Below, piece after piece: positions 51,775 through 61,912 of a DNA stretch of 64,000 bases (its first letter is position 1; every line of letters starts with the position of its first letter). The stretch spans positions 1 to 64,000 of the IMG/VR virus record IMGVR_UViG_3300049793_000366; one strand, 5' to 3'. Both the position numbers and the translations under genes were made by a program. The notes under the pieces were generated by a model. The model was not told the origin of the DNA and made no database searches. It was given only the letters and a program-made list of their open reading frames with translations.

Positions 51775-54003
51775 ATGAAAGAGAAAAACCTAAATATGCC
51801 TCAAACAGACTTCACACAGAGGTCAGAGTCATTGAAACGAGAACCAGAATTACTTAAACTCTGGAATGAGCTTGATGTACTTAAGCTTAGAAATGAATTA
51901 AATAGTGATACATTCACTTTACACGATGGACCGCCGTATGCTAACGGTGATGTTCACGTTGGTCACGTACTTAATAAAGTATTAAAAGATATGGTTGTTA
52001 AGTATCAACTAATGAGTGGTAAGAAAGTCAATTTCAGACCAGGATTTGACTGTCATGGTTTACCAACTGAATTAGCTGTTCTCAAAAAGCATGGCAAACT
52101 TGATGTGTCTGAACTGAGAGTTAAATGTAAAGAGTGGGCAACTGAGTATTCAGATAAGCAACGCGAATCATTTAAATCATTGGGTGTTTTCGCTGAATGG
52201 GATAACCCGTATTACACGATGTCACCTGAGTTCGAAGTTGGACAGCTTAAAGTATTATATAAGCTCTTAAACGATGGATTGATGTATCTTGATAGTAGAC
52301 CTGTGTATTACTCACCATCATCAAGAACTGTTTTAGCCGAATCAGAGCTTGAATATAAAAACAGAAAAGACAAATCTGCCTATTTCACCTTGGATGCCGA
52401 AGATGGTAGATTATTATTGGTTTGGACTACACAACCTTGGACAGCGTTAGGTAACGTAGCTGTTTGTGTTAATAACAGACTGACGTATGTAACAGTTGAA
52501 CAAGATTCTAAACTATATGTTGTTGCTAAGGATTTAGCTCACGTATTGAGTGGTGTTGTTGTAGATGAATATAGTGGTGAGAGTCTTGTTGGTCTTAAGT
52601 ATCACAATAAACTAACTAATACAGAGGGTGTTGTTGTGTCTGATAAATTCGTTAAGTCAAATAGTGGTACTGGTTTAGTACACTTATGTCCAGCACATGG
52701 TGAGGATGACTTCGATGTGTGTCAGAAACATAATCTATCATGTGATGATTTGACTGATTCTGGTGGTAAACTTCTTCTGAATGGGTTATTCTGTTTAGAC
52801 CAAGGTTCAGAGTCAGTTCTTGATATGATGAAAGAAAATGGTATGTTATATTCAACGTCTGAATATGAACACTCTTATCCACATGACTGGCGAACAAACG
52901 GACCTGTTTATTTTAAGCTAACTGAGCAATTCTTCCTTGATTTGGCTGAGTTAAAAGAGAAAGTATTAGCTGTCCTACCTACTGTTGATTTCACAGAAGA
53001 GCGTTGGAAAAACAGATTAACGAATATGTTGAATTTAAGAGACCGTTGGTGTTTATCGCGTCAAAGAAAATGGGGATTCCCTTTAGCTGTATTTCTTAAA
53101 GACGGTAAGCCATTTACGCATCCAGAATTAGAAGCTCACTTATTTGAGTTGTTTAAGCAGAATGGCTCTGATGTTTGGTTTAACTCAACAGAAGATGAAT
53201 TATTACCTGAGCAATTTAAGAATACTGGTTTAGTTAAGTGTGATTATACATTAGATGTGTGGTTTGATTCTGGTGTTAGTTGGTATTCAGTTGTGGGTGG
53301 TCAATCAGATGTTTACTTCGAAGGTTCAGACCAACACAGAGGTTGGTTTCAGTCTTCATTACTAACATCAGTAGCAATGACTGGTGAAGCACCTTACAAA
53401 AAAGTACTTACACACGGATTTGTATTGGATGATAAGGGAAGAAAGATGTCTAAATCATTAGGTAATGTTGTAGAACCAAAGACTGTTCAACAAAAGTATA
53501 ATACTGATGTGCTTAGATTGTGGGCGGCTGTTGTTAACTATGGTGATGATGCACAATTAGGTGATGGTGTGTTGAAGAGCTGTTCTGAATATTATTTCAA
53601 ATTTAGAAATACGCTTAAATATTTACTTGGTAATATGTATGGGTATGATTTTAGAGAGGTACAGCTAAATGAAAAAGATAGACTGGCTCTTACTCGATGT
53701 GATGCTATGTATAATAATTGTTTAAAGTCATATTCCGAGTATAACTTCAGAAAAGTATTTGAAGAATTAATGTCGTGGGTTTCAGAATTTTCAAGTCAGT
53801 ACTTAGACAATCAAACAAAATCCTTTTTATATGAATATGATGTTAATTCCGATGAACGTCAACAATGTCAATATGTTCTTAGGTATGCATTAGAGCGTTT
53901 TATGAAAGTACTTGCTCCTATGTGTTCATTTTTAGCAGAAGACGCTTATCAACATTATGAGTTCAAACAAGATGTTTCTGTATTTATGGAAAAAATGGAA
54001 TAA
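51775..54003 (+). CDS. ileS: isoleucine--tRNA ligase (type 1), C-terminally shortened
   Basis: HDGPPYANG, HVGH, PGFDCHGLP, WTTQPWT, GTGLVH.CPAHG.DD, WCLSRQRKWG, EGSDQHRGWFQSSL, KMSKSLGN. Confidence 0.95.
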   Translation: MKEKNLNMPQTDFTQRSESLKREPELLKLWNELDVLKLRNELNSDTFTLHDGPPYANGDVHVGHVLNKVLKDMVVKYQLMSGKKVNFRPGFDCHGLPTELAVLKKHGKLDVSELRVKCKEWATEYSDKQRESFKSLGVFAEWDNPYYTMSPEFEVGQLKVLYKLLNDGLMYLDSRPVYYSPSSRTVLAESELEYKNRKDKSAYFTLDAEDGRLLLVWTTQPWTALGNVAVCVNNRLTYVTVEQDSKLYVVAKDLAHVLSGVVVDEYSGESLVGLKYHNKLTNTEGVVVSDKFVKSNSGTGLVHLCPAHGEDDFDVCQKHNLSCDDLTDSGGKLLLNGLFCLDQGSESVLDMMKENGMLYSTSEYEHSYPHDWRTNGPVYFKLTEQFFLDLAELKEKVLAVLPTVDFTEERWKNRLTNMLNLRDRWCLSRQRKWGFPLAVFLKDGKPFTHPELEAHLFELFKQNGSDVWFNSTEDELLPEQFKNTGLVKCDYTLDVWFDSGVSWYSVVGGQSDVYFEGSDQHRGWFQSSLLTSVAMTGEAPYKKVLTHGFVLDDKGRKMSKSLGNVVEPKTVQQKYNTDVLRLWAAVVNYGDDAQLGDGVLKSCSEYYFKFRNTLKYLLGNMYGYDFREVQLNEKDRLALTRCDAMYNNCLKSYSEYNFRKVFEELMSWVSEFSSQYLDNQTKSFLYEYDVNSDERQQCQYVLRYALERFMKVLAPMCSFLAEDAYQHYEFKQDVSVFMEKME

Positions 54004-58249: not shown

Positions 58250-59197
58250 TTAGTTAAGCTTAATACCCGTTACTGGGTCATAGTTTAAAATAAGAATTTC
58301 TAAACCTTTTGTTTGTTCTCCTTTATTTTCGTGATTATTACCACCTTGAGCAGAACTTCTGAATACTTCCTTTTCAGTCCAGTAGTATTTATCTCTTGGT
58401 AGAATTTCTTCAAGTAATGGGAAATAGTAATATGATAATGACCAACGACTCTTAGTAGTTTTCAATAACTCTAATAATCTTCTATGTGATTGAGGTCCAA
58501 ATACACCCTCAGCATCACAGCCATACCAAAATAATCTACGAGCATCATCTTCGCCTTTCTCTTCGTTAAATCTCGCATATGGAGGGTCTAAGTAGATATA
58601 AGTATCATCAGCATCATATTTAGTAATAAGCTCTTCAAAATCGATGTTATACCAATTGGTGATTGAATTAAGTTTGTCTGTGTATGTATTCTTTTTAAGT
58701 TTATTGATTAAAATCTCTAACTTAAGTTTGTCGTGAGATTTCTTATAACCATTGAAACCAGCACCGCGAGGATATACTGAATTATGAGCAGATGTAATTA
58801 AGAAAGCATACATAGCCGCTTTTTCAAAGTCACCAATCTCAAAGTCTGAATTATCTAAGAAGTCATTCTTAACATACTCTCTGTATATTGCTTTAAAGAA
58901 ATCCCATTTCTTTAAAGGGTCTGTTTCAGTAGTGAATAATACTGTTGATTTAAGTTTATCAATAGCATTAAGCATTTTCTCTGGTTCAGAGCAACATCTA
59001 TAAAGATTTACTTGATGCCTATTTTTATCATTGTAGACAACCGTATCAAATATAAGTGATGGGTCATCCATATATGTTCCCATTGAACCGCTAAATGGTT
59101 CGAGATATGTGTTTATACCACTTTTGGGTATTTTAGAGTTAATGAACTCAATAAAGGCGTTTGATGATTTACCACCGAAATAACTGATAACAGACAT
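58250..59197 (-). CDS. DNA adenine methyltransferase (Dam/D12 class)
   Basis: ISYFGGKS, EPFSGS, VYND, IYLDPPY. Confidence 0.88.
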   Translation of the reverse strand: MSVISYFGGKSSNAFIEFINSKIPKSGINTYLEPFSGSMGTYMDDPSLIFDTVVYNDKNRHQVNLYRCCSEPEKMLNAIDKLKSTVLFTTETDPLKKWDFFKAIYREYVKNDFLDNSDFEIGDFEKAAMYAFLITSAHNSVYPRGAGFNGYKKSHDKLKLEILINKLKKNTYTDKLNSITNWYNIDFEELITKYDADDTYIYLDPPYARFNEEKGEDDARRLFWYGCDAEGVFGPQSHRRLLELLKTTKSRWSLSYYYFPLLEEILPRDKYYWTEKEVFRSSAQGGNNHENKGEQTKGLEILILNYDPVTGIKLN

Positions 59198-59954: not shown

Positions 59955-59955
59955 G

Positions 59956-60348
59956 GGTGGAGAAGACGGGAATCGAACCCGTGTCCAATGATATCAGTGA
60001 ACTACTTTCTACAAGTTTATTTTAGTTTTCTAACTAAACCAAATAATCAATTTTTTTAACGACTAAAGAGATAATATGTCGCCGATTCAGTTATATACCA
60101 CTTGTGTCGAGAACTGTGGTTCCGAAGATTTTGTCGATTTTAAGCAATCTCAAGTTCTTCAACTTGAGTAGCAGTAGTCTTAGACTTTGCTAATACACTT
60201 AAAATATCGGATAACGATCCGACTTCGTTTGTAATTACGTTGCCGTTTACAGATTTTATCTACTAATTTATTAATCGCACGTTTTATTAGACAAAGCGAT
60301 ACTTGCTTATAACTCTCATCTCATCACCGTCGAAGCCTTAACTTCCCC
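59956..60348 (-). ncRNA. ssrA: tmRNA
   Basis: 5' GGGGAAG pairs with 3' CTTCTCC-A giving G3:U; TTCGAC D-loop analogue; T arm ACGGG-TTCGATT-CCCGT; internal tag frame 60244-60140. Confidence 0.93.
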
Positions 60349-61207: not shown

Positions 61208-61912
61208 TTATTTAGACGTAGCATCCTTATCTTCATCAGATAGGAAATCCATTGACGCATAAGTATCATTAGCAATAGACGAAGCTCTCATAGAGAAAGA
61301 CTTAGACATACTCTTATATACTTTAGCATTAGATTCAACATCAGAACTAAATTGCATTACGTTGCTTACGTTGATACCATAGTTTCTTGCAGTCGATATA
61401 GAATCGATATTTGCTCCAACAAATGTAAATGTCCAACGCTCAGTTTTTTGTAATTCTTCAATCATTGATTTAACTTTACCACCATCGAATTCTCTTGATG
61501 CGTTCTCTTCACCATCAGTGATGATTACTACAACAGCAGATGCTTCACCAGTAGCGATTTTATCTTTAATTGTATCATTAAGTCTTGTAACACCAACACC
61601 AATAGCATCTAATAATGCTGTCATACCATTACAATTATAATTACTTGTAGTGATATGCTCTAATAAAGATGCACTTCTATCATTATATTCAATTGTTACG
61701 CTGTTATTGAAATGTAAGAAAGACATTGTATATTTTTGGTCAGGAAATTCCTTCTCCAATTGTTTAACGGTATCTATTTGTTCATTAACACCACTAATAG
61801 TGCTTTTTGATAAATGACCCATTGATGAACTACCATCTACGATAAGTAAATAGTGAGTTTCTTTCACTGCCATTTTAGTTCCTGTTTTGTCAATTACGAT
61901 TGCTTTGCTCAT
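61208..61912 (-). CDS. von Willebrand factor A (vWA) domain protein
   Basis: MIDAS DGSSSM, TALLDAIG, IITDGEENASRE, FVGAN. Confidence 0.88.
   Translation of the reverse strand: MSKAIVIDKTGTKMAVKETHYLLIVDGSSSMGHLSKSTISGVNEQIDTVKQLEKEFPDQKYTMSFLHFNNSVTIEYNDRSASLLEHITTSNYNCNGMTALLDAIGVGVTRLNDTIKDKIATGEASAVVVIITDGEENASREFDGGKVKSMIEELQKTERWTFTFVGANIDSISTARNYGINVSNVMQFSSDVESNAKVYKSMSKSFSMRASSIANDTYASMDFLSDEDKDATSK

What the first reader, a model, noticed from the sequence alone, without database searches (positions are those of the whole stretch)
59956..60348. Phage tmRNA with an unusually long 34-codon tag ending EELEIA
Seen: tRNA-Ala-like termini. After GTAAAC the frame 60244-60140 reads GNVITNEVGSLSDILSVLAKSKTTATQVEELEIA*. 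The 3' end reads ACCC, so CCA is not fully encoded. No smpB is present in the window. Known: typical tags are about 10 aa and end in ALAA-like degrons; Bacteroidota tags usually resume at Gly. Inference: the long tag with an acidic end may rescue ribosomes while evading or redirecting ClpXP/Lon degradation. The resume codon is inferred.
Basis: partly seen in the sequence, partly recalled or inferred. Interest (0 to 1): 0.75.

Follow-up and report, generated by a model that had tools for sequence, protein, structure and literature searches.

The report
Huge-phage tmRNA with 34-codon tag

Summary
ARAGORN and Rfam RF00023 (83.6 bits, threshold 47) both place a one-piece tmRNA at 59956-60348 on the minus strand.

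- **Tag length:** ARAGORN reports a 16-residue tag. The supporting evidence is an invariant [U/C]AAAC-GGC-AAC-GU block, a U(-5)A(-4) context like Bacteroidota tmRNAs with GN... tags, indels in multiples of 3 inside the frame but of 1-2 nt just upstream, a third-position bias, and peptide conservation between divergent lineages.
- **RNA fold:** it covaries (24 of 47 pairs compensated), and G3.U70 is invariant.
- **Host record:** a 508-kb virus record with TerL, 61 tRNA genes and no 16S rRNA.
smpB is absent from the window but present at about 178 kb. The phage also encodes a CCA-adding enzyme, ClpP and a ClpC-type unfoldase. This argues against simple evasion of degradation and fits degradation, possibly by the phage's own protease.
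- **How unusual it is:** tags of 8-35 residues, and tmRNA plus SmpB in huge phages, are already published. Tags of 24-34 codons recur among large-phage tmRNAs.

Verdict: a new member of a known kind, of moderate interest.

The parts
59956..60348 (-). One-piece tmRNA (ssrA) gene, 393 nt up to the encoded ...ACC
   Evidence: ARAGORN. Rfam RF00023 at 83.6 bits, full-length model 1-374. Seven homologues were found.
60342..60348 (-). Acceptor stem, 5' strand (GGGGAAG), including G3 of the G3.U70 alanine identity pair
   Evidence: Pairs with 59959-59965. G3.U is invariant in 8 of 8 homologues, and positions 5 and 6 show compensatory changes.
60301..60329 (-). Helix 2, 5' strand (two segments, tmRNA positions 20-31 and 43-48)
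   Evidence: RNAalifold pairs alignment columns 22-33 with 365-375 and 45-50 with 343-348. Most of these pairs show compensatory changes.
60274..60300 (-). Pseudoknot 1, stem 1 (ATCGC 60296-60300 pairs with GCGAT 60274-60278) and its loop. The second stem (about GUCUA with UAGAU, ending near tmRNA position 91) is inferred only.
   Evidence: Columns 51-55 pair with 73-77. A-U changes to G-C in L035, and C-G changes to G-C in L066 and group B.
60245..60249 (-). Frame-setting element UAAAC immediately 5' of the resume codon (U at -5, A at -4)
   Evidence: The block [U/C]AAAC-GGC-AAC-GU is invariant in all 8 homologues. Bacteroidota tmRNAs have the same context (UAAAU|GGC, UACAU|GGC, UAACU|GGC). 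Conservation of U85/A86 is published (PMC1168896).
60242..60244 (-). Resume codon GGC (Gly), tmRNA positions 105-107
   Evidence: Indels of 1-2 nt occur just upstream of GUAAAC, while indels downstream are all multiples of 3.
60143..60244 (-). Tag reading frame of 34 codons: GNVITNEVGSLSDILSVLAKSKTTATQVEELEIA
   Evidence: Translation. Variable sites by codon position are 14/7/23 (p = 0.012). In the first 19 codons they are 7/2/14 (p = 0.009). The peptide is conserved against group B.
60140..60142 (-). Tag stop codon UAA
60188..60190 (-). GCA codon that ARAGORN took as the resume codon (rejected)
   Evidence: It lies 68 nt past PK1. Its upstream context is not conserved. ARAGORN's start points in groups A and B are not homologous positions.
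60206..60223 (-). Hairpin 1 inside the tag frame (codons 8-13)
   Evidence: 7 bp in the window sequence. It is kept in L035 and L066 through compensatory changes.
60149..60168 (-). Hairpin 3 inside the 3' part of the tag frame (CUCAAGUU/AACUUGAG), probably the helix 5 equivalent
   Evidence: 8 bp. L035 keeps it as ACUCAG/CUGAGU. Group B has CCUCGUU/AACGAGG at the same relative place.
60020..60039 (-). Conserved hairpin in the 3' pseudoknot region (GUUUAGUU/AACUAAAA)
   Evidence: Columns 320-327 pair with 332-339, with compensatory changes in 5 of 8 pairs.
59986..60016 (-). Helix 2, 3' strand
   Evidence: Partners of 60301-60329.
59966..59982 (-). T arm (ACGGG-UUCGAUU-CCCGU)
   Evidence: Stem pairs covary (columns 379-383 with 391-395). 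The loop is GGUUCGA-type.
59956..59965 (-). Acceptor stem 3' strand (CUUCUCC), discriminator A and the encoded CC. The next base (59955) is C, not A.
   Evidence: A phage CCA-adding enzyme gene lies at G000:118344.

Best explanation
This is a functional, phage-encoded one-piece tmRNA belonging to a huge soil phage (record 508 kb; the same SmpB gene sits on a 712-kb contig elsewhere).

**Proposed working**
1. The precursor is trimmed and its 3' end is completed to CCA. Only CC is encoded, and the phage has its own CCA-adding enzyme.
2. AlaRS charges it with alanine through the G3.U70 pair.
3. It binds the phage's own SmpB and enters ribosomes stalled at mRNA 3' ends.
4. Translation resumes at GGC (60244-60242), positioned by the upstream UAAAC element.
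5. The ribosome adds Ala plus the 34 residues GNVITNEVGSLSDILSVLAKSKTTATQVEELEIA and terminates at UAA (60142-60140).
6. The tag most likely still acts as a degradation signal, because its C-terminus is aliphatic-Ala. The likeliest protease is Clp. The phage encodes ClpP and a ClpC-type two-ring unfoldase and no ClpX, so the extended tag may be matched to that enzyme.

**Shown here:** gene, boundaries, fold with covariation, alanine identity pair, reading frame and its conservation, and the presence of the partner genes.

**Inferred:** charging, the exact resume nucleotide, actual tagging, and the fate of tagged proteins.
For: **Gene and fold**
- ARAGORN plus Rfam at 83.6 bits.
- 24 of 47 consensus pairs carry compensatory changes across 8 homologues. 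G3.U70 is present in 8 of 8.

**Resume at GGC**
- The block [U/C]AAAC-GGC-AAC-GU is invariant in two lineages that are otherwise too diverged for blastn.
- Saprospiraceae, Chitinophagales, Bacteroidales and Bacilli tmRNAs with canonical tags (GNSNYAMAA, GNTQYAMAA, GENNYALAA, GNDFNFSPAFA) have the same U(-5)A(-4)NNY|GGC/GGA context and a similar position: nt 83-102 against 98-105 in the phages.
- Indels of 1-2 nt lie just 5' of GUAAAC, while indels of 3 and 6 nt lie inside the frame.
- In group A, variable sites by codon position are 14/7/23 (p = 0.012). In the 19 codons that ARAGORN leaves out they are 7/2/14 (p = 0.009). The other two frames hold 2-5 stops in every homologue.
- L035 EVGSRADVLAVI against group B EVGTREDLVAAL: 15 of 36 nt differ, yet 6 residues are identical (Arg is AGA in one and CGT in the other) and 5 replacements are conservative.
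- The Rfam alignment also puts the consensus resume codon on this GG.

**Partner genes in the same record**
- SmpB: 178 bits, above the equivalog cut-off.
- CCA-adding enzyme.
- ClpP of cellular type with Ser/His/Asp intact.
- A 709-aa Hsp100 protein closest to ClpC, with VGF in the ClpP-docking loop.

**Phage identity:** TerL, 61 tRNA genes, no 16S rRNA.

**Possible expression:** two wastewater libraries labelled RNA-Seq have 188-206-nt contigs, about 97% identical, lying only inside the tmRNA and not on its flanks. Their differences keep the frame open.
Against: - No experimental evidence of charging, tagging or degradation exists. The phage and its host are uncultured.
- Only about four independent sequences exist in the close group and one tight cluster in the distant group.
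- The tag region folds into three hairpins that are themselves kept by compensatory changes. Part of the third-position bias may therefore be RNA-structural and not a coding signal.
- An 18-codon open stretch in AT-rich sequence is not rare by chance. My rough estimate, not a tool result, is about 0.27.
- Two in-frame codons upstream (GUA-AAC in group A, GCA-AAC in group B) cannot be strictly excluded as the true start.
- The tool flags the RNA-library contigs as 'probably DNA', and their depth is only 2.7-4.4.
- The link between the tag and the phage Clp protease rests on gene co-presence only. One other long-tag phage (G012, 95% complete) has neither ClpP nor a Clp ATPase.
Confidence: 0.78

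Rival explanations
1. ARAGORN is right. Translation resumes at GCA (60190-60188), giving the 16-residue tag AKSKTTATQVEELEIA. The 54 nt between GGC and that codon would then be an untranslated structured spacer containing a hairpin.
For: - ARAGORN's call.
- GCA (Ala) is the commonest resume codon (PMC1168896).
- The window sequence has U at -5 and A at -4 before that GCA too.
- The spacer does contain a hairpin kept by compensatory changes.
Against: - The resume point would lie about 68 nt past PK1, against roughly 10-15 nt in known tmRNAs.
- The context before that GCA is not conserved: UAUUA in the window, UUAAC in L035, and no homologous Ala codon in group B.
- ARAGORN's start points in groups A and B are not homologous positions.
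- The supposedly untranslated part is the best-conserved part of the peptide between lineages. It shows a 7/2/14 codon-position pattern, indels only in multiples of 3, and a switch between Arg codon families.
- ARAGORN truncates L199 in the same way, where UAAAU|GGC is again present upstream.
Confidence: 0.04
2. The frame is right but starts two codons earlier, at GUA (60250-60248) in this phage and at GCA in the divergent group. That would give a 36-codon tag: VNGNV... here and ANGNV... in group B.
For: - Both upstream codons are in frame and open in all 8 sequences.
- Group B reads GCA-AAC-GGC, which resembles the E. coli GCA-AAC-GAC start.
- The only change at the -1 position (C to U in L035) would be synonymous (AAC to AAU) in that reading.
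Against: - With GUA or GCA as the start, positions -5 and -4 would be A-A (group A) or A-C (group B) instead of the conserved U-A.
- Val is not among the resume codons listed in PMC1168896.
- Bacterial relatives with the same UAAAY|GGC-AAY context have 9-residue GN... tags called from GGC.
- The Rfam alignment places the resume codon on GGC.
Confidence: 0.1
3. The tmRNA rescues ribosomes, but its long tag with Glu near the end is not a degron for host ClpXP or Lon. Tagged products would be spared, or the phage RNA would mainly compete with the host tmRNA, for example to keep ribosomes free without triggering host responses.
For: - The tags here have Glu at -3 in most homologues (EIA, ELA, ELV, EVA) instead of the A-L/M-A-A of Bacteroidota tags.
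- From my own knowledge, the last three residues dominate E. coli ClpX recognition.
- No Lon and no ClpX were found in the record.
- One long-tag phage has no Clp genes at all.
Against: - The last two residues remain aliphatic plus Ala/Val in all 8 homologues, the usual non-polar C-terminus.
- The relative L035 ends in LVA, which from my own knowledge is an efficient degron variant in E. coli.
- The phage invests in an intact ClpP and a ClpC-type unfoldase with a docking loop.
- Strong conservation of both halves of the tag implies recognition by some partner.
Confidence: 0.2
4. It is not a working phage gene. It would be a host-derived remnant, such as an ssrA fragment duplicated at a prophage attachment site (IMG/VR labels the record 'provirus'), or a decaying pseudogene.
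For: - The IMG/VR class is 'provirus'.
- From my own knowledge, many prophages integrate into ssrA.
Against: - The gene is full length, with both halves of the tRNA-like domain.
- It lies about 60 kb inside the record.
- It is flanked on both sides by genes syntenic with other viral contigs.
- Its fold covaries.
- Its tag family is unlike any bacterial tag retrieved.
- Homologues sit next to the same VWA gene in at least 8 contigs from soil, sediment and wastewater.
Confidence: 0.02

Closest known systems
Bacteroidota one-piece tmRNAs (Saprospiraceae, Chitinophagales; tags GNSNYAMAA and GNTQYAMAA)
   Same: - One-piece architecture.
- Gly resume codon followed by Asn (GGC-AAY).
- U(-5)A(-4) context (UAAAU|GGC in Chitinophagales against UAAAC|GGC here).
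- Similar distance of the resume codon from the 5' end.
- Terminal Ala.
- The 3' 66 nt are 76% identical to the Chitinophagales RNA.
   Different: - The tag has 34 codons instead of 9.
- The C-terminus is E-I-A instead of A-M-A-A.
- The tag frame is folded into three conserved hairpins.
- It is carried by a phage.
- Outside the tRNA-like domain, sequence similarity is too low for blastn.
tmRNA and SmpB genes of huge phages (Al-Shayeb et al. 2020, PMC7162821)
   Same: A phage genome above 200 kb carries a tmRNA, SmpB, many tRNA genes, aminoacyl-tRNA synthetases and other translation genes.
   Different: That paper assigned tmRNAs with ARAGORN and, in the passages I searched, did not analyse the tags. 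Here the tag is re-derived and ARAGORN is shown to truncate it. Whether this genome belongs to one of that paper's named clades was not tested.
tmRNAs of cultured phages (mycobacteriophage Bxz1 group, Bacillus phage G; Hudson, Lau and Williams 2014, PMC4131195)
   Same: A phage-borne ssrA. The same paper also describes a TLD-only (tRNA-like domain only) form in phage DS6A. Similar TLD-only relatives of the present RNA exist (L056, L050).
   Different: The host phyla differ. No SmpB is listed for those phages in the passages read. Their tags were not retrieved here, so no sequence comparison was made.
Long tmRNA tags at the upper end of the natural range (8-35 residues, PMC8012679; Mycoplasma tags of about 27 residues degraded by Lon, from my own knowledge)
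   Same: The tag is far longer than the roughly 10-residue norm, with information spread along its length and not only in the last three residues.
   Different: No Lon gene is present here. The co-encoded protease is ClpP with a ClpC-type ATPase. There is no sequence similarity to Mycoplasma tags.
Other large-phage tmRNAs with extended tags found here (L199/L201 GKKSVWDAINSFGTPVTEVEYAYAA, L013 GNTNFWSLVNQGVNTPVAEELLAA, L008 AVELSTMTFEDAMAFVGADYAVAA)
   Same: - 24-25-codon tags.
- A Gly resume codon after UAAAU, UAAAC or UAAGU in three of the four.
- An acidic stretch followed by an aliphatic/Ala end.
- The 3' third of the RNA is 70-76% identical to ours.
- G011 (L199) also encodes ClpP and a two-ring Hsp100 protein.
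   Different: These are different tag families. Ours is the longest. G012 (L008) has no Clp genes.

Membership tests
tmRNA (Rfam RF00023, one-piece ssrA) | Match to the family covariance model above the curated threshold, full length | tested here: met
   83.6 bits against a threshold of 47, model positions 1-374, E = 5.8e-31. ARAGORN agrees.
tmRNA (Rfam RF00023, one-piece ssrA) | tRNA-Ala-like domain: 7-bp acceptor stem with G3.U70, T arm, discriminator A and a CCA end | tested here: met
   G3.U is present in 8 of 8 homologues. The acceptor and T stems covary. The T loop is GGUUCGAUU. CCA is encoded only as CC, but a CCA-adding enzyme gene is present.
tmRNA (Rfam RF00023, one-piece ssrA) | mRNA-like domain: a start-codon-less frame beginning shortly after PK1, preceded by the conserved U(-5)A(-4), and ending in a stop codon | tested here: met
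   UAAAC|GGC at tmRNA position 105, about 13 nt after the inferred end of PK1. The frame has 34 codons and ends in UAA. It is conserved in 8 homologues. The exact first codon is inferred.
tmRNA (Rfam RF00023, one-piece ssrA) | Pseudoknots (PK1 before the frame, PK2-PK4 after it) | tested here: inconclusive
   PK1 stem 1 is supported by two compensatory changes. PK1 stem 2 is invariant in the close group and unclear in the distant group. One 3' hairpin covaries. PK2-PK4 were not resolved.
tmRNA (Rfam RF00023, one-piece ssrA) | A cognate SmpB protein is available | tested here: met
   SmpB lies at G000:177791-178204. Pfam gives 178 bits, and the NCBIfam equivalogs give 185.7 and 178.2 bits, both above cut-off. 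The match reaches profile position 152 of 156, so the C-terminal tail is present.
tmRNA (Rfam RF00023, one-piece ssrA) | Alanine charging and trans-translation activity on stalled ribosomes | not testable with these tools
   This needs biochemistry or a tagged-peptide readout. The only hint of expression is short contigs in RNA-labelled libraries, which may in fact be DNA.
ssrA degradation tag (degron for ClpXP, ClpAP, Lon or Tsp) | Non-polar C-terminus ending in Ala-Ala or similar, recognised by a protease | tested here: inconclusive
   The last two residues are I-A (L-A, V-A or L-V in relatives), but Glu sits at -3 and there is no A-A. Recognition itself cannot be tested here.
TLD-only mini-tmRNA (as in mycobacteriophage DS6A) | tRNA-like domain present but the mRNA-like domain and pseudoknots absent | tested here: not met
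   The molecule is full length at 393 nt with an intact frame. TLD-only relatives do exist elsewhere (L056, L050).
Prophage att-site copy of host ssrA | A partial 3' ssrA fragment at the edge of an integrated element, identical to the host gene | tested here: not met
   The gene is complete, lies about 60 kb inside the record, is syntenic in other viral contigs, and has a tag unlike the bacterial ones.

The most novel reading that the evidence does not exclude
Large phages that carry their own trans-translation kit may have tags matched to the class of Clp unfoldase they also carry.

- Phages with ClpX keep short, bacterial-style ...RMAA tags (G006, G008).
- Phages with an N-domain-less ClpC-type two-ring ATPase plus ClpP have extended two-part tags of 25-34 residues. 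These have a conserved N-terminal half and an acidic stretch followed by an aliphatic-Ala end (this phage and G011).

On this reading, the long tag would be a private degron. It would route products of phage-rescued ribosomes to the phage's own protease, and possibly keep them apart from host-tagged proteins. It might also help the phage cope with read-through caused by its own TAG-suppressor tRNA.
Probability: 0.2. Interest if true: 0.7.

Novelty: new member of a known kind. Interest (0 to 1): 0.42.

Why it matters
- **Annotation:** the standard tool (ARAGORN) truncates the tags of this and other large-phage tmRNAs. Surveys that rely on it, including the huge-phage survey, will miss that many phage tags are two to three times longer than bacterial ones.
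- **Biology:** this phage carries a complete ribosome-rescue and proteolysis set: tmRNA, SmpB, a CCA-adding enzyme, ClpP and a ClpC-type unfoldase. The tag is conserved along its whole length in relatives from soil, sediment and wastewater. That makes it a good system for asking why a virus needs its own trans-translation and what a long tag is recognised by.
- **Limits:** it does not change the current understanding of tmRNA. The RNA architecture is standard and the tag length lies within the published range.

Tried and rejected
1. blastn of the tmRNA against 50,697 GenBank phage records found no match.
2. Exact-pattern scans with T-arm/acceptor, 5'-end and helix-2 motifs in viral and metagenome contigs gave only one distinct close relative (the L035 type). 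They also returned many unrelated tmRNAs, mostly two-piece alphaproteobacterial ones on viral contigs.
3. A protein anchor (the 313-aa neighbour) gave L048 and L049, which have no tmRNA nearby.
4. The VWA neighbour used as an anchor through the look-up of encoding contigs was productive in 6 of 9 look-ups. L060, L061 and L062 had no tmRNA in the flank.
5. The 709-kb relative found via SmpB (L057) could not be searched as a whole record.
6. SmpB as a host marker is not decisive. The best bacterial hits (50-58% identity) mix AT-rich Bacilli/Mycoplasmatota with Saprospiraceae and Chitinophagales.
7. Global TAG recoding is not supported. The standard code already gives 89% ORF coverage. Only the 460-480 kb bin improves markedly (0.60 to 0.77) when TAG is read as sense.
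8. A long-range pairing of the resume region with ...GUUGC... 70 nt downstream, predicted by RNAalifold, is broken at 2 of 6 pairs in the window sequence. I did not adopt it.
9. The sigma-70 promoter scan gave nothing above shuffled expectation. Two of the three terminator-like hits are the hairpin inside the tag frame, read on either strand.
10. I did not run complex prediction. A single unfoldase subunit with a 34-residue peptide would not be informative, and the tRNA-like domain cannot be supplied as one unaltered stretch.
11. A note written says '17/36 nt differ'. The script gives 15 of 36, and the report uses 15.
Full report
**1. The observation**

ARAGORN finds one RNA gene in the window, a tmRNA at 59956-60348 on the minus strand. 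Rfam's tmRNA model RF00023 matches 59955-60348 over its full length at 83.6 bits against a gathering score of 47, E = 5.8e-31, and is the only Rfam hit in 64 kb. The sequence begins GGGGAAG and ends CTTCTCC-A-CC. That forms a 7-bp acceptor stem with a G3.U70 pair, a discriminator A and two of the three CCA bases, with a C at 59955 where the final A would be. The minus-strand frame ending at 60140 translates as *IKSVNGNVITNEVGSLSDILSVLAKSKTTATQVEELEIA*.

**2. What carries it**

The window is the first 64 kb of a 507,910-bp IMG/VR virus record (class 'provirus', CheckV completeness 97%).
- The record is 33% G+C throughout. It has 61 tRNA genes, including one with anticodon CUA.
- It has a 725-aa open frame with a large-terminase domain and no 16S rRNA.
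- Neighbouring genes are syntenic with other viral contigs at 65-90% protein identity.
- The source sample appears to be a soil metagenome. Close relatives occur in sediment and wastewater.
- The standard genetic code gives 89% ORF coverage, so TAG is not globally reassigned.
- The phage's SmpB sequence is also recorded on a 711,805-bp contig, and a 76%-identical SmpB lies on a 709,085-bp contig. The true genome may therefore be near 710 kb.

**3. Homologues**

Pattern scans and look-ups anchored on the adjacent VWA-domain gene (61208-61912) recovered seven further tmRNAs of the same family.
- The close group comprises L058 (88% identical), L035 (76%, seen on five contigs) and L066 (77%).
- The divergent group comprises L059, L063, L064 and L065. 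Its Rfam scores are 36-41 bits, and blastn finds no similarity to ours.

An RNAalifold consensus of the eight sequences has 47 pairs, of which 24 show compensatory double changes. G3.U70 is present in all eight. The acceptor stem, T arm, helix 2, the first stem of pseudoknot 1 and a 3' hairpin all covary. This is an RNA under selection for the tmRNA fold.

**4. Where translation resumes**

Five lines of evidence point to GGC at 60244-60242.
- **(a) Invariant block.** The 13-nt block [U/C]AAAC-GGC-AAC-GU is invariant across both groups, although the flanks have diverged.
- **(b) Bacterial context.** tmRNAs from bacteria whose SmpB is closest have canonical 9-11-residue tags starting with Gly: GNSNYAMAA, GNTQYAMAA, GENNYALAA and GNDFNFSPAFA. 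Each is preceded by U-A-N-N-Y (UACAU, UAAAU, UAACU, UAAUC), at nt 83-102 of the RNA. The phage has UAAAC|GGC-AAC at nt 105, and the divergent group has CAAAC|GGC at nt 98. U(-5) and A(-4) are the published conserved upstream positions U85/A86, and Gly is the second commonest resume codon (PMC1168896).
- **(c) Indels.** Indels of 1-2 nt occur immediately 5' of GUAAAC. From GGC onward every indel is 3 or 6 nt.
- **(d) Codon-position bias.** In the close group, variable sites fall 14/7/23 by codon position (chi-square p = 0.012). In the first 19 aligned codons, the part ARAGORN excludes, they fall 7/2/14 (p = 0.009). The other two frames contain 2-5 stops in every homologue.
- **(e) Peptide conservation.** The peptide is conserved between the two groups where the nucleotides are not. 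L035 EVGSRADVLAVI and group B EVGTREDLVAAL differ at 15 of 36 nucleotides, split 5/2/8 by codon position. Even so, six residues are identical, including Arg encoded by AGA in one and CGT in the other, and five replacements are conservative.

Rfam's own alignment also places the consensus resume codon on this GG, though with low posterior probability.

ARAGORN's start points are not homologous between the groups. Their contexts are not conserved, and they would lie about 68 nt beyond pseudoknot 1. ARAGORN truncates another phage tag in the same way (L199).

One caveat applies. The tag region of the close group folds into three hairpins kept by compensatory changes (60223-60206, about 60186-60176 and 60168-60149). 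Some third-position changes may therefore serve RNA structure. Points (a), (b), (c) and (e) do not depend on that.

A start two codons earlier (GUA here, GCA in the divergent group) cannot be excluded, but it lacks the U-A context. I put the 34-codon reading at about 0.8, the 36-codon reading at about 0.1 and ARAGORN's at about 0.04.

**5. The rest of the pathway**

The record has one at 177791-178204. It scores above the NCBIfam equivalog cut-offs and extends to profile position 152 of 156, so the C-terminal tail is present. The record also encodes the following.
- A 415-aa CCA-adding enzyme, which fits the incompletely encoded CCA here and in relatives.
- A 289-aa protein with part of the AlaRS catalytic core, next to two tRNA-Ala genes.
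- A ClpP that scores 243 bits on a cellular ClpP model against 78 bits on the ClpP-like head-maturation model. Its Ser, His and Asp align with those of solved ClpPs.
- A 709-aa two-ring Hsp100 ATPase lacking the Clp_N domain. Its best structural relatives are ClpC proteins. It carries VGF in the loop aligned with the AGF and LGF ClpP-docking motifs, a segment that is about 10 residues shorter in ClpB alignments.

No Lon, no RF-1 domain and no ClpX-sized AAA_2 protein were found.

**6. How it most likely works**

Shown here: a structurally constrained tmRNA with the alanine identity pair, a conserved 34-codon frame in the canonical place, and a cognate SmpB in the same genome.

Inferred: end maturation and CCA completion, alanylation, entry into stalled ribosomes with phage SmpB, resumption at GGC, addition of Ala plus 34 residues, and termination at UAA.

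The fate of tagged proteins is not known. The last two residues are aliphatic plus Ala/Val in all eight homologues. L035 ends in LVA, which from my own knowledge is an efficient degron variant in E. coli. Glu at -3 and the lack of Ala-Ala differ from Bacteroidota tags. Conservation of the N-terminal half (GNV..EVG[ST]..D[ILV][LV]..L) across lineages implies that something reads it. The phage's own ClpC-type/ClpP pair is the obvious candidate, but the link is by co-presence only.

The suppressor tRNA gives a possible reason for a phage to boost rescue capacity. Read-through of TAG stops sends ribosomes to mRNA ends, and SsrA is known to cope with suppressor-tRNA read-through (Ueda et al. 2002, cited in PMC8012679). 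That link is speculative.

**7. Context and novelty**

tmRNA and SmpB genes in huge phages are published, though the tmRNAs were assigned by ARAGORN and the passages I searched contain no tag analysis (PMC7162821). tmRNAs in mycobacteriophages and Bacillus phage G, and a TLD-only form, are catalogued (PMC4131195). Natural tags range from 8 to 35 residues (PMC8012679). So neither a phage tmRNA nor a 35-residue tag is new in kind.

A small census of SmpB-bearing viral records and other hits gave the following.
- Extended tags: 34 and 29 codons in this family, 25 in L199/L201, and 24 each in L013 and L008.
- Short canonical tags: DDTTTYRMAA in a 193-kb phage (G006) and DDEIDFRMAA in a 554-kb phage (G008).

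The two short-tag phages encode ClpX, with equivalog scores of 556 and 410 bits. This phage and G011 (25-codon tag) encode ClpP plus a two-ring Hsp100 protein. G010 (46% complete) has ClpP only, and G012 (24-codon tag) has neither. The pattern is suggestive, but the sample is far too small to call.

**8. Expression**

In two wastewater libraries labelled RNA-Seq, the only contigs matching the 1-kb stretch at about 97% identity are 188-206 nt long and lie wholly inside the tmRNA (60132-60337). None lie on the flanking protein genes. Shorter, less similar pieces there match mainly the T-arm end and a segment near 60254-60310. The differences in the 188-206-nt contigs give L11Y and S16N, both residues also seen in L066, and keep the frame open. 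The tool marks these runs 'probably DNA' and the depth is 2.7-4.4, so this is only a hint.

**9. Verdict**

The functional speculation is untested, and the genome context modifies it. This is a new, well-documented member of a known kind, with an interesting but unproven twist about tag-protease matching. Interest is about 0.4.

Noticed in passing
G000:C1:121446-121514 (+) and 121630-121702 (+); outside the window, same genome (L002:1501-1569 and 1685-1757): A 69-nt tRNA-Ala-like element has a GGGGAUU/AAUCUCC acceptor stem with G3.U70, a D arm and a T arm, but only a 3-bp stub where the anticodon arm should be. Rfam tmRNA gives 22.6 bits, and ARAGORN does not call it. It lies 115 nt upstream of the TAG-suppressor tRNA (anticodon CUA). 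It could be a decayed tRNA or a TLD-like decoy.
   Followed up: partly
L056:777-862 and L050:20-105 (metagenome contigs): These are 86-nt TLD-only mini-tmRNAs (Rfam 65.6 and 57.1 bits). Their acceptor, GGCUUCGACG and T-arm sequences are the same as in this tmRNA, but the whole mRNA-like and pseudoknot part is replaced by one hairpin. They resemble the TLD-only form reported for mycobacteriophage DS6A.
   Followed up: partly
window 60206-60223, 60176-60186, 60149-60168 (-): Three small hairpins lie inside the tag reading frame and are kept in relatives by compensatory changes. The same nucleotides therefore seem to be under both peptide and RNA-structure constraint. Two of the three terminator-like hits of the scan are the first hairpin, read on either strand.
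   Followed up: partly
L199 (G011:C1:200185-200650) and L064/L065: ARAGORN truncates long tags in other phage tmRNAs too. In L199 it reports EVEYAYAA, where UAAAU|GGC opens a 25-codon frame. In the divergent group it reports ALQNN... This looks like a systematic under-call.
   Followed up: partly
G000:C1:423004-423711 (+): A 289-aa open frame matches only part of the class II AlaRS catalytic core (62.6 and 19.5 bits). It lies just downstream of two tRNA-Ala(UGC) genes (421162-421312). It may be a mini-AlaRS, which would be relevant to charging the tmRNA.
   Followed up: no
whole record; P0001 and P0003, L057: The phage's SmpB is also on record on a 711,805-bp contig, and a 76%-identical SmpB lies on a 709,085-bp contig of an NCBI assembly. 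The 508-kb 'provirus' record may be a trimmed piece of a roughly 710-kb phage genome, close to the largest reported.
   Followed up: no
G000:C1:460000-480000: Stop-to-stop ORF coverage in this bin rises from 0.60 to 0.77 if TAG is read as sense. Most other bins barely change, though 320-340 kb rises from 0.85 to 0.94. Together with the tRNA(CUA), this suggests local or gene-specific TAG read-through and not a genome-wide code change.
   Followed up: no
window 51775-54003 (+); 58250-59197 (-); 61208-61912 (-): The window holds a 742-aa class I aminoacyl-tRNA synthetase (tRNA-synt_1, 369 bits), a D12-class adenine methyltransferase, and a VWA-domain protein. The VWA protein is the conserved neighbour of the tmRNA in relatives.
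   Followed up: partly
L059:6297-6983, L063:5708-6391, L065:6233-6916: In the divergent phage group, a 227-228-aa protein with PCRF and RF-1 domains (a short release-factor-like protein) lies within 3-4 kb of the tmRNA. No RF-1 domain was found in the present record.
   Followed up: no
L057:3942-9845: In the 709-kb relative, smpB sits directly after an NAD salvage and synthesis cluster (NAPRTase, a nucleotidyltransferase, isochorismatase-family protein, NAD synthase, NUDIX). This is in line with reports of NAD+ pathways in jumbo phages.
   Followed up: no
G008:C1:333469-333888: The 554-kb phage G008 has a second, weaker ClpP-like match (87 bits) with an in-frame TAA. This may be a pseudogene or a divergent copy.
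   Followed up: no
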